A stretch of DNA of 63,147 bases, counting the filler, from Bigelowiella natans CCMP2755 (Eukaryota > Protista > Cercozoa), in NCBI GenBank assembly GCA_000320545.1. It is 12 parts of 12 records of this genome, joined end to end, with 100 filler letters (N's around TTAATTAATTAA, not from the genome) between each part and the next. Parts side by side here need not be neighbours in the genome. Positions count along the whole stretch, not along the records: positions 1 to 7,349 come from ADNK01002743.1; 11 more parts are not named here. One strand, given 5' to 3'. Position 1 is the first letter of the stretch. Each line of letters starts with the position of its first letter. This document shows, one piece after another, positions 610-4,067 of the stretch. A program made the translations under genes and the position numbers. The notes beneath the pieces were generated by a model. That model was not told the DNA's origin and searched no databases. It was given only the letters and a program-made list of their open reading frames with translations.

Positions 610-979
610 TACATGCATCTGCTACCACATACGTTTGTTCCATGCCGTTGCTCCTGGATTTGACTCCTACCGTGCATGCGTTGCCCTGCTGCATGCCCTG
701 CGTGTTGTCGCCGCTCAGAGCGCATACAAACGCCTTTTCCACGGCATCGCGGAAAGAGACACCGACCTAATTTCGACTGGTACGATTTCTGCCGAGAAGG
801 CCGTTGATGCTGCTGCTGCTGGTGGTGGTGGTGGTGGGGCCACGGATCTTAACGATAAAAGCGATGAGATTAGTATTAAGTCTGCAGTTCCAAACCAAGA
901 CGCGGCGTATCGTCGCCGTTCTGTGGTAATGAAGCGTGGGAAGCGGTTGTCGCTGACAATTAGAGAGGTCGTTAGATGA
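160..979 (+). CDS. 3' exons of a hypothetical multi-exon gene
   Basis: Open segments bounded by AG/GT (160-248, ~366-440) and a terminal exon ending ...RRRSVVMKRGKRLSLTIREVVR* at 979, separated by microsatellite introns. No recognisable domain. Confidence 0.4.
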
Positions 980-1399
980 CAACGATAGCAATGCACAGAC
1001 AGCGAACACGATTACGTGCGTGGTTCTTCAATCAGTCCATCAGGCGAGTCCTTGTCGCAAAGCATCGCATCTCATAGTAGCTCATGGCAAATTTGAGTTT
1101 TACCACATGCGCATGCAAGCATAGAGTAGTAGCATTGGTGTCGAACATGACTATATGACAGGTAGCTATGTGCCTGTCAATTGTCGACATCATACGCAAA
1201 TTACGTCGTGTGCGCGCAGATTTGAATTCAAAAATGAAATACATGCAGCTTGTACTAGCTAGCTAGTGTATAAACAAAGCAGCGGCCATTTGACTGCTAA
1301 ACAAAACATGCGCAAAATCGAGATGTAGGCTATTCACTAGTAGCTCATTCATTACTTTTGTGTGTGTATTGATGTATATGTGTCACATTTCGCCTCATT

Positions 1400-3370
1400 C
1401 CAAAGGCAAATGAAGAACTTAATACCCCTCTAAATGGAAGGACGATCTCTCTCCTACAAGTAGCTTCAAAGATGGAAGACAAACTAGTAGAACACCGTCT
1501 TCGCGAAGCTGTGCCTCCCAAAAACATGAGTGAACACCAATGCGCATTCATGAAAAATGGATCCTGCGAAACAGCACTGACGAAAATGACGCAAACAATC
1601 GAGGATGGAGTACGTGACAAAAAACTCGCAGCCATCACATTGTTTGCAGATGCCTCTAAAGCCTACCCAAAAGCATGGCACTCCGGCATTGTTCGCAAAC
1701 CATGTCACAAGTGTGGAATGCGAGGCTCCCTGACATTGTGGATAGACGACTGGCTTAGAAATCGCACTGCCAGATTCAAATTTGGCAACTCCTTCTCTGA
1801 ACCTATGAATCTGGAGAGCGGAGTTCCTGAAGGATCGTCGCTCAGCTGCTTCCTGTTCATGACATGTTGCGACATTTGTGAACACATGAAAAACACTGAT
1901 TTCCAAATCTGCTGTGACGACGTCACACCATGCAAATCATTTTCCCCCAAGCGATGGGGGAAAATGCAAGATGATATCCAAGAGGATCTAAACAAAATGA
2001 CGGAATGGTGCATGAAATGGCGGATGCGGTTCAATGGGGACAAGAGCGGATGCCTCATCATGGACAAAAGAAACAAAGCCCACCAACACCAAACTTCTTG
2101 GAACATTTCTCTGAATCTCCAGGGCAACACAAAAAGGGTCGACAGCGGCCGATGTCTCGGTTTGATCTTGGACAACAAACTGACCTTCGAAAAACATGCT
2201 CTCGCTTCTCACCTGAAGTTGCAAAAAAAGAGAAGGTTCTCATTGAGGTCATGTTGTTTCAGATGCTTCATGCCGCTAAATGTCAGACTGAAATTTTGCA
2301 AAACATGGTTCACTGCATCGAGCAGATGCGCGGCTCCAATGTGGAGATCACGCAAAAACAAGCGCATCAAACAGCTGGATTCGTTGGAAACCCACACCCT
2401 GAAAAGAGTGTTGGGATCACCTGGATCCATCTCCAACGACGTTCCCCACGTCATTTCAGGCACATTGCCACCCCGATGTCAAACCACAGTGCAATGTGCA
2501 AAATCGTGGTTGCGCACTAACGCATGGATCGACAAGGGGAACGGCCATGAAGTGCACGAGGGCGCAAACGTTTGGAGCAGTTGCGGTTGCACAATTGAAA
2601 ATCGAAAAATCACAGATGACACATCGTGGATTCATGTGCCCACAAAAACATGGAACAAAGTGTCCTTGTTTCGCCGGCTCAAGTCGATGGCTGACGACCT
2701 GTTGGAGGACGAGCTTCCCACCATTTTGACGACACCAAACACGCTCAAACGTGATTTGGAAAAACATCACAATCTGATCAAGTCCTCTGCTCGCATCAAG
2801 TTCGAGGAGGAATGGACCCATGATTTCGTGAGAGCTGTGCATCTCAAGAATCTTGGATTCCTTCCATCATCGCAGATCACTGGCATCAATCTGAAACTGC
2901 CCAGCATTGCTACATCATGGATGCGCGCCATCTGTGGAGTGGGCAATCTCGGCAAATTCATGTTGTCACGTGGACAATGTGATGTGACAGATGCCACATG
3001 CAATGCATGTGGAATCCTGAAGGACATGGATCATCTCCTGCAATGTCCAACACATGGCCAACAACGATCCAGATTGCGCAATCAAATGACCGCAATCATG
3101 AACCGCAACGACGAGACGAAGCGGCTGACAAAGGCTGAAAAAAATTCAAGAACTGCTGCGCGCAATGCGCGTCATCTTCGGTCGAAAGAGAATGCTTTTG
3201 TCGCGCCTTGCCACACTTTTGCATGCATGAAGTGCATCGTGGCAGAAACCAACAGACACATCATCAGCGCTGTAGCCGCTGCATTGCACAGCTACATCAG
3301 GATGACCATTGAAAAAATTCAATTTGTTCATTACATCCGTCTCATATGCACATATGTGTGTACATATTGA
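1400..3370 (+). mobile_element. 5'-truncated, degenerate non-LTR retrotransposon (LINE) ORF2: reverse transcriptase plus C-terminal zinc knuckle
   Basis: RT motifs RTISLL..SKMEDKLV, FADASKAYPKAWH (cf. DxSKAFDxVxH), GVPEGSSLS (cf. GVPQGSxLSP), CCDD (cf. YADD), W..KWRMRFN..KS and RCLGLILDNKLTF (cf. KYLGxxLD), then CNACG..DMDHLLQCP. Catalytic motifs are mutated, so it is inactive. Confidence 0.9.
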
Positions 3371-3757
3371 CCACAAACTTCATTTCTTTTAGCATCATTG
3401 TGAACGAGTAACCTGTCGCATGATGTGCACACTACAGGCATACTCAAATAACACACACAGCATCGTCTAGATGTGCAGCACCAACGCATCACAACGCGGC
3501 GCTACATGCTGGCATATCGCACACCCCTAGCAGACACGCGCAATGTTGTGCAAAGACGACCATTGCGAATTATATTCCTGCTGCATGATAGACATGCAAC
3601 ATGTTACACACATATTTGCACTGTACGTCAACAACAAAATGAGGACTCAATGCAAACTGCAACAATTGCACACCAACATTGCATGGGCGCGCATTGCTAG
3701 TGACATGCTCTGGATGCTGCTAATGTGCATCAGCGCACGACTCTCTTCTTATCCTCA

Positions 3758-4067
3758 ATTGACAGACTGTCGTCGGCCTACATCGTCATCTCCGCCATTG
3801 CCGTCGCCGAGGACGCCTCCCCAGCTAACGGGGTTGAAATCAATACCAGCCCCTGCGAAGGAAGTGTGAGAAAGAAAACAATTAGTTCGTCATCCGAAGC
3901 CCCCCGTCGGTGCTTTAGGCTCGAGCGCTCTCGCAGCGGCGTTCTCGCATCTTACCGGTGACTTTCGTGTCCAGACTGCTTCCCATGCTCTCCCCAGGAA
4001 TGTGCGAGACTTTCCGGGGTTGTACTGATCAATGGGTGCGTGCGTGCGTGTGTGTGTGTGTGTGTGT

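What the first reader, a model, noticed from the sequence alone, without database searches (positions are those of the whole stretch)
1400..3370. Candidate repeat-targeted TpA->TpG/CpA hypermutation system ('reverse RIP') that has inactivated a LINE
Seen: about 10 TA dinucleotides (by eye) in 1681-3300, far fewer than in the flanking introns and genes, while CpG is plentiful. The core of the RT ORF has essentially no Tyr, and conserved motifs are changed exactly as TA->TG or TA->CA predicts: YADD->CCDD, KYLG->RCLG, DDxTLY->DDVTPC (cta tac -> cca tgc), QY.F->QCAF and KL..YG->KPCHKCG. Both A->G and T->C occur on the same coding strand, so the process acted on both strands of DNA. The element's edges (1380-1680 and >3240) retain TA. 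Established: fungal RIP drives CpA->TpA in duplicated DNA, methyl-CpG decay removes CpG, and ADAR edits one RNA strand and favours UAG. None of these fits. Inference: this may be a genome-defence mutator acting A:T->G:C at TpA in repeats, for example by adenine or 6mA deamination or by error-prone patch synthesis. I do not know of a described system like this, but I cannot search the literature.
Basis: partly seen in the sequence, partly recalled or inferred. Interest (0 to 1): 0.93.

Follow-up and report, generated by a model that had tools for sequence, protein, structure and literature searches.

The report
TpA-hypermutated LINE copy in Bigelowiella
In the alga Bigelowiella natans, a recently described genome-defence process that turns TA letter pairs into TG or CA has almost completely rewritten this retrotransposon copy and many of its siblings; the process is already reported, but its action on retrotransposons, spreading from their 3' end, is shown here copy by copy.

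Summary
In detail: 10 TA in 1681-3300 against 106 expected (o/e 0.09), and independent DNA runs hold the same sequence. The window is Bigelowiella natans; 1388-3364 is a 5'-truncated LINE. Family copies are bimodal: about 15 young copies (TA o/e 0.3-0.6) and others at 0.03-0.15. One copy differs from a young sibling at 56 sites, 53 of them TA>TG/CA. Against a TA-rich marine outgroup the window shows 93 such changes versus 1 in reverse. The process is already described in this species (Mettrop et al., bioRxiv 10.64898/2026.01.13.699255) from integrated viruses, with transposons inferred only from composition. Added here: hits are independent per copy, post-insertional, on both strands and mostly confined to the element. 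They begin near the 3' end and (TA)n tail and spread 5'-ward, spare CTA/TAG sites, and cannot create stop codons. 'Repeat-induced' is unproven (a single-copy virus is hit; rDNA is spared). YCDD and RCLG are native to the family. This copy was already dead by truncation. The enzyme is unknown; an ADAT/TadA-like deaminase is my best guess.

The parts
1388..3344 (+). 5'-truncated copy of an APE-RT non-LTR retrotransposon (LINE); begins just before the RT domain, lacks ORF1 and endonuclease
   Evidence: 81% identical to young copies over 1388-3345 and nothing upstream; 700-1387 and 3380-4030 are unique apart from a microsatellite; intact relatives carry Exo_endo_phos_2 + RVT_1
1388..1680 (+). partly mutated 5' edge
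   Evidence: of the young copy's TA sites, 8 kept, 6 TG, 1 CG; 10 TA remain, 7 in CTA/TAG context
1681..3300 (.). saturated core; 10 surviving TA, 9 of them CTA or TAG
   Evidence: (9/10 vs 45/145 in the young copy, p 3e-4)
1472..3370 (+). open 632-codon frame, Tyr-poor (5 Y, 33 C); stays open because TA>TG/CA cannot create stop codons
1481..2056 (+). reverse transcriptase domain (RVT_1, E 1e-13)
1910..1921 (+). catalytic motif YCDD changed to CCDD (TAC>TGC)
2999..3046 (+). C-terminal CxxC...HxxxC zinc-knuckle-like motif of ORF2
   Evidence: read from the translation; assignment from my own knowledge of LINE ORF2 proteins
3320..3322 (+). former stop codon: TAA in other copies, TGA in most young copies, CAA here (read-through)
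   Evidence: other copies read T at 3320
3262..3344 (+). high-copy 3' tip, shared with many short truncated copies or a SINE-like partner
   Evidence: contig depth far above single copy; a 29-mer has 239 exact matches, 91 of the first 100 keep both TAs
3345..3364 (+). (TA)n 3' tail or target microsatellite, 7 of 10 units converted to TG/CA
   Evidence: in-phase TA/TG/CA run of 10 units; pure (TA)n in environmental relatives

Best explanation
The locus is a LINE copy in Bigelowiella natans saturated by the host's TpA hypermutator, the process Mettrop et al. 2026 measured on integrated viruses. Shown here: (1) after insertion, TA sites in the element change to TG or CA; (2) each copy is hit independently, on both strands, until nearly all TA is gone; (3) the first hits fall at the (TA)n tail and the 3'-most susceptible sites, and later hits reach further 5'; (4) flanks are mostly spared; (5) CTA/TAG sites resist. 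Damage is by missense only (Tyr>Cys/His; Ile and Leu changes); no stops arise, so dead copies keep long ORFs. Inferred: the chemistry is deamination of the A of TpA to hypoxanthine in transiently single-stranded DNA by a TadA/ADAT2-3-type enzyme, fixed as G at replication, over many rounds (about 50% likely). The enzyme is probably recruited by a silent-chromatin state or an element-derived RNA nucleated at the 3' end, rather than by DNA-DNA repeat pairing (weakly supported).
For: L044 vs young L041: 53/56 differences are TA>TG/CA; hits by zone 0/65, 6/21, 15/21, 31/33 from 5' to 3'. Lightly hit young copies: 24 hits in 225 site-copies at reference 2400-2700, 0 in 1397 upstream (12/15 vs 0/125 sites, p 6e-15). 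TG-versus-CA concordance between heavy copies is mostly 45-65%, near chance. Runs test z = -0.3, so strands are interspersed. Duplicated loci L059/L060 share 3 kb and differ mostly at TA sites, including CA vs TG at the same site. Outgroup L065: 93 forward vs 1 reverse for the window; synonymous T3>C before A 33/37 vs 32/85 elsewhere. Second subfamily L019 saturated against L064. Survivors 73/95 CTA/TAG vs 45/145, p 3e-12. De novo TpA>TpG/CpA at about 6e-7 per site per generation in MA lines; ADAT2 candidate Bn78255. TadA-derived editors give genome-wide A>G/T>C with a TA preference (PMC13225742). Genome has TadA-like loci; no alkyladenine glycosylase match (weak).
Against: No enzyme has been tested. 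TA is palindromic, so the altered base could be T. No de novo hit in a LINE has been observed: high-depth repeats were excluded from the MA calls, and this copy did not change between 2011 and 2025 in the covered parts. Some light-copy hits are shared between copies (inheritance, conversion or recurrence). No Argonaute/Piwi match (exon-wise search, weak) argues against small-RNA guidance. The converted 'tails' could be old target microsatellites.
Confidence: 0.9

Rival explanations
1. Homology-triggered 'reverse RIP': duplicated DNA is recognised by pairing and mutated; the 3' polarity reflects the higher copy number of LINE 3' ends.
For: Hits stop near element edges; polarity parallels copy number, with read depth rising toward the 3' end.
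Against: The main MA target is a single-copy 186-kb NCLDV; at least six full-length 18S copies keep TA o/e 0.84; about 14 copies 99-100% identical are nearly untouched; unique-looking flank of L060 was hit.
Confidence: 0.2
2. Same targeting, different chemistry: a modified base at TpA (6mA that deaminates, or an oxidised thymine that pairs with G) or an error-prone polymerase (Pol eta/iota-like) filling repair patches.
For: A palindromic dinucleotide decaying by transitions mirrors methyl-CpG decay; the strict TA specificity is tighter than that of engineered TadA (66-89% TA).
Against: No Tet/JBP match (uninformative control). AA>AG is absent in L044 (0 of 56), whereas Pol eta hits WA motifs (own knowledge). 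Eukaryotic 6mA is typically ApT in active genes (PMC12695648; B. natans not covered).
Confidence: 0.3
3. Editing during retrotransposition: A-to-I editing of the RNA and cDNA strands of the TPRT hybrid, with a 3'-to-5' gradient set by the direction of reverse transcription.
For: 3' polarity; mild excess of coding-strand A>G (428 TG vs 324 CA, p 2e-4); one ADAR/ADAT1-type locus in the genome.
Against: Duplicated loci diverged at TA sites after duplication, including in flank; integrated viruses mutate the same way without retrotransposition; TAG, the favoured ADAR context (own knowledge), is the disfavoured one here.
Confidence: 0.04
4. Intrinsic TA-poor family composition, or an assembly artefact.
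For: The young active lineage is itself TA-poor in its last 730 bp (o/e 0.10).
Against: Young copies have 61-72 TA where mutated ones have 3-19; environmental relatives have o/e 0.77-0.81 throughout; independent runs match the window.
Confidence: 0.01

Closest known systems
TpA hypermutation of integrated viral DNA in Bigelowiella natans (Mettrop et al., bioRxiv 10.64898/2026.01.13.699255)
   Same: Same species, same TpA>TpG/CpA spectrum on both strands. RT and EN-RT Pfams are enriched among their TpA-depleted CDS, and seven gene models of this LINE family appear in their low-TpA lists.
   Different: They measured de novo rates in NCLDV and virophage regions and inferred transposon targeting from composition only. 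Copy-versus-copy polarisation, independence, 3'-to-5' polarity, CTA/TAG sparing, tail conversion and scars in the active lineage are not in the main text or figure legends I read.
Fungal repeat-induced point mutation (RIP; RID/DIM-2)
   Same: Dinucleotide-specific transition saturation of transposons on both strands, largely element-delimited.
   Different: Opposite direction (A:T>G:C at TpA versus C:G>T:A at CpA); occurs in vegetative clonal lines; hits single-copy DNA; creates no stop codons.
TadA/ADAT2-3 deaminases and TadA-derived adenine base editors
   Same: A>G with a 5' T/U preference; genome-wide A>G/T>C at TA motifs (PMC13225742).
   Different: A natural DNA-directed, element-targeted activity has not been shown for the B. 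natans enzyme; specificity here is near 95-100% TA.
APOBEC3/ADAR editing of retroelements
   Same: Defensive hypermutation with positional gradients (own knowledge).
   Different: Those act on one strand of RNA or cDNA before integration; here both strands of resident DNA are hit.

Membership tests
B. natans TpA hypermutation (Mettrop 2026) | Host is Bigelowiella natans | tested here: met
   JGI Bigna1 proteins at 93-99% identity to a sibling copy; many 2025 single-sample DNA runs hold the window
B. natans TpA hypermutation (Mettrop 2026) | Changes are almost exclusively TpA>TpG and TpA>CpA | tested here: met
   53/56 in L044; 93:1 polarity for the window
B. natans TpA hypermutation (Mettrop 2026) | Both strands of resident DNA | tested here: met
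   interspersed TG and CA; post-duplication divergence L059/L060
B. natans TpA hypermutation (Mettrop 2026) | Restricted to foreign or selfish, silent DNA | tested here: met
   flanks and rDNA retain TA; next to no RNA reads on the element body in 6% of one run
B. natans TpA hypermutation (Mettrop 2026) | Elevated de novo rate in MA lines | tested here: inconclusive
   no change in this nearly saturated copy in one 2025 run; too few targets remain
Fungal RIP | C>T at CpA/CpN | tested here: not met
   CA is enriched (o/e 1.44); changes are A>G/T>C
Fungal RIP | Triggered by sequence duplication | tested here: inconclusive
   rDNA and near-identical young copies spared; single-copy NCLDV hit; polarity parallels copy number
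Fungal RIP | Premeiotic timing, RID/DIM-2 dependence | not testable with these tools
   the published MA lines were clonal cultures with single-cell bottlenecks
ADAR-type editing | One strand only, UAG preferred | tested here: not met
   both strands; TAG/CTA are the survivors
APE-type non-LTR retrotransposon (LINE) | ORF1 plus ORF2 with APE endonuclease and RT; 5' truncation; simple-repeat 3' tail | tested here: met
   clade within the LINEs not determined

The most novel reading that the evidence does not exclude
B. natans has a natural, element-targeted DNA adenine-editing system that nucleates at the 3' end or (TA)n tail of LINE insertions, spreads 5'-ward over about 1-3.4 kb and stops near element edges. 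It recognises more than a dinucleotide (CTA/TAG resistant), apparently works without Argonaute, and has driven the surviving active LINE lineage to shed TpA at synonymous sites.
Probability: 0.4. Interest if true: 0.8.

Novelty: new member of a known kind. Interest (0 to 1): 0.55.

Why it matters
The preprint calls its own transposon evidence suggestive. A LINE family with untouched, half-converted and saturated copies settles that retrotransposons are targets and gives a time series for the mechanism: where it starts, how far it spreads, which contexts it skips. A natural A:T>G:C DNA mutator is otherwise known mainly from engineered base editors, so these constraints help identify the enzyme. 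In practice, Tyr-free open ORFs with TA o/e below 0.15 are a cheap signature for finding the system in other genomes, and a warning that many B. natans gene models are dead transposons.

Tried and rejected
Artefact, family composition and general GC3 shift were rejected. Inheritance from one mutated source copy was rejected (concordance near chance). Long single-strand processive tracts were not seen in saturated copies (runs test). A search of 150 best representatives for Tyr-free LINEs in other organisms found only the close family fragments; two of these were checked and fall in B. natans clusters, so there is no evidence for or against the system elsewhere. Literature searches found no other description.

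Full report
Observation. Window 1681-3300 holds 10 TA dinucleotides against 105.6 expected from base composition (o/e 0.09, Poisson p 7e-33), with TG 1.77, CA 1.44 and CG 0.83; the flanks have TA o/e 0.98 and 0.91. Contigs from DNA runs of 2011, 2021 and 2025 match the window with no differences over pieces of up to about 1 kb, so it is not an assembly error; RNA reads on the element body are close to zero in the 6% of one run that was read.

What the locus is. The genome (91.4 Mb, 3736 contigs) is Bigelowiella natans: a sibling ORF matches JGI Bigna1 proteins at 93-99% identity. Window 1388-3344 is a copy of a LINE family with dozens of long copies. Intact relatives have ORF1 and an ORF2 with APE endonuclease and RT and end in a (TA)n run. 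The window copy starts just before the RT domain and has no upstream element sequence, so it was dead on arrival.

Family evidence. Copies are bimodal: about 15 are 99-100% identical with TA o/e 0.3-0.6, while the rest have 0.03-0.15. L044 differs from young L041 at 56 sites, 53 of them TA>TG or TA>CA. In a second subfamily, genomic L019 is saturated relative to a Tara-assembled intact element. A marine metagenome relative with TA o/e 0.81 polarises the window: of 132 aligned TA sites, 41 are TG, 52 CA, 2 CG and 13 TA, with one change in reverse. This is not a general GC shift: synonymous T>C occurs at 33/37 third positions before A and 32/85 elsewhere.

How it acts (shown). Copies were hit independently: agreement on TG versus CA between heavy copies is mostly 45-65%. 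Both strands are hit, interspersed (runs test z = -0.3), with a mild coding-strand excess (428 TG, 324 CA). Hits are post-insertional: duplicated loci L059 and L060 differ mainly at TA sites, some CA in one and TG in the other, and in L060 the hits extend some 450 bp into the shared 3' flank. Usually the flanks keep TA. There is a 3'-to-5' polarity. In lightly hit young copies 24 hits fall in reference positions 2400-2700 and none in 1397 site-copies upstream (p 6e-15 by site); L044 grades from 0/65 to 31/33. The window's own 5' 290 bp is only half converted. The (TA)n tail is often converted even when the body is clean, and in the window 7 of 10 units are converted; I cannot exclude that some tails are old target microsatellites. 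Surviving TAs are CTA or TAG: 9/10 in the window core and 73/95 in heavy copies against 45/145 in a young copy. In the published mutation list I count by eye 20 of 210 in TAG/CTA, but the background frequency is not available. The change cannot create a stop codon; here it removed one (TAA>CAA at 3320), which explains the long open, Tyr-poor frame. The young lineage carries old scars: its last 730 bp have only 5 TA, all CTA/TAG, and against the outgroup it has lost TA mainly at synonymous sites while keeping 35 of 41 Tyr codons (significant for T>C, not for A>G or for the second subfamily).

QYAF>QCAF, KYG>KCG, YCDD>CCDD and TPY>TPC are genuine TA>TG hits. The Cys of YCDD, the Pro of DDVTP and the Cys of R/KCLG are native: they occur in young copies and environmental relatives, and YCDD and RCLG also in a 41%-identical element.

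Mechanism (inferred). I favour adenine deamination in exposed single-stranded DNA by a TadA/ADAT2-3-type enzyme, fixed at replication over many rounds (about 50%). tRNA A34 follows an invariant U33 (own knowledge), TadA-derived editors leave TA-biased A>G/T>C genome-wide (PMC13225742), and the genome has several TadA-like loci. Because TA is palindromic, a modified A or T, or an error-prone polymerase, remains possible. Targeting by DNA homology is not excluded, because polarity parallels copy number. Against it, rDNA and near-identical young copies are spared and the best-measured target is single-copy. No Piwi domain was found, a weak negative.

Comparison with what is known. Mettrop et al. 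(bioRxiv 10.64898/2026.01.13.699255) report TpA>TpG/CpA hypermutation at about 6e-7 per site per generation in integrated NCLDV and virophage DNA of this species. They note enrichment of RT and endonuclease-RT domains among TpA-depleted CDS, compare it to RIP, and propose ADAT2 Bn78255. Seven gene models of this LINE family are in their low-TpA lists. It works like RIP in effect but is not RIP (opposite direction, clonal cells, single-copy target), and it fails the ADAR tests. I found no other description.

Verdict. A real feature and a correct rediscovery of a process first reported in 2026. This locus is a new, well-documented target class. The polarity, context sparing and independence results go beyond the preprint text I read and are testable with existing MA data. 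Interest 0.55. Limits: no further genome sequence could be fetched, only one TE family was examined, and no enzyme was tested.

Noticed in passing
window 3262-3344: The LINE's 3' tip is shared by hundreds of short elements (239 exact 29-mer matches; varied 5' junctions at 3262-3266; RNA reads on both strands): extreme truncations or a SINE partner.
   Followed up: partly
L045 and L038, 3' flanks: Young copies inserted next to TA-devoid DNA; in L045 only the two 3'-most TAs are converted, as if the neighbouring domain leaked in, while L038 is untouched.
   Followed up: partly
L057:2282-2293 and 2640-2651 (oriented): A 12-bp target-site duplication with no (TA)n tail, so the tail is not obligatory.
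   Followed up: no
flanks of L044, L048, L057; window 1253-1266 and 1337-1342: CTAG-rich runs persist beside elements, consistent with CTAG being the most resistant TA context.
   Followed up: partly
window 900-1140 (and 3586-4000): Low-level stranded RNA reads on unique flanks in opposite directions; the element body has almost none.
   Followed up: no
window 3475-3850: Unique sequence with reduced TA (o/e 0.3-0.5) and raised TG/CA: possible spread from the element or an old unrecognised repeat.
   Followed up: partly
G000 whole genome: No Piwi/Argonaute and no alkyladenine glycosylase match in exon-wise searches; if real, both bear on targeting and on persistence of inosine.
   Followed up: no
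L065/L068 (marine metagenomes): A widespread relative of this LINE (86-member cluster) has normal TA throughout; its host may lack the mutator, or the assembly reflects young copies only.
   Followed up: partly
Mettrop Table S2: Four T>C entries in the NCLDV region are listed in ATG/ATT context although the text says all fall on TpA.
   Followed up: no
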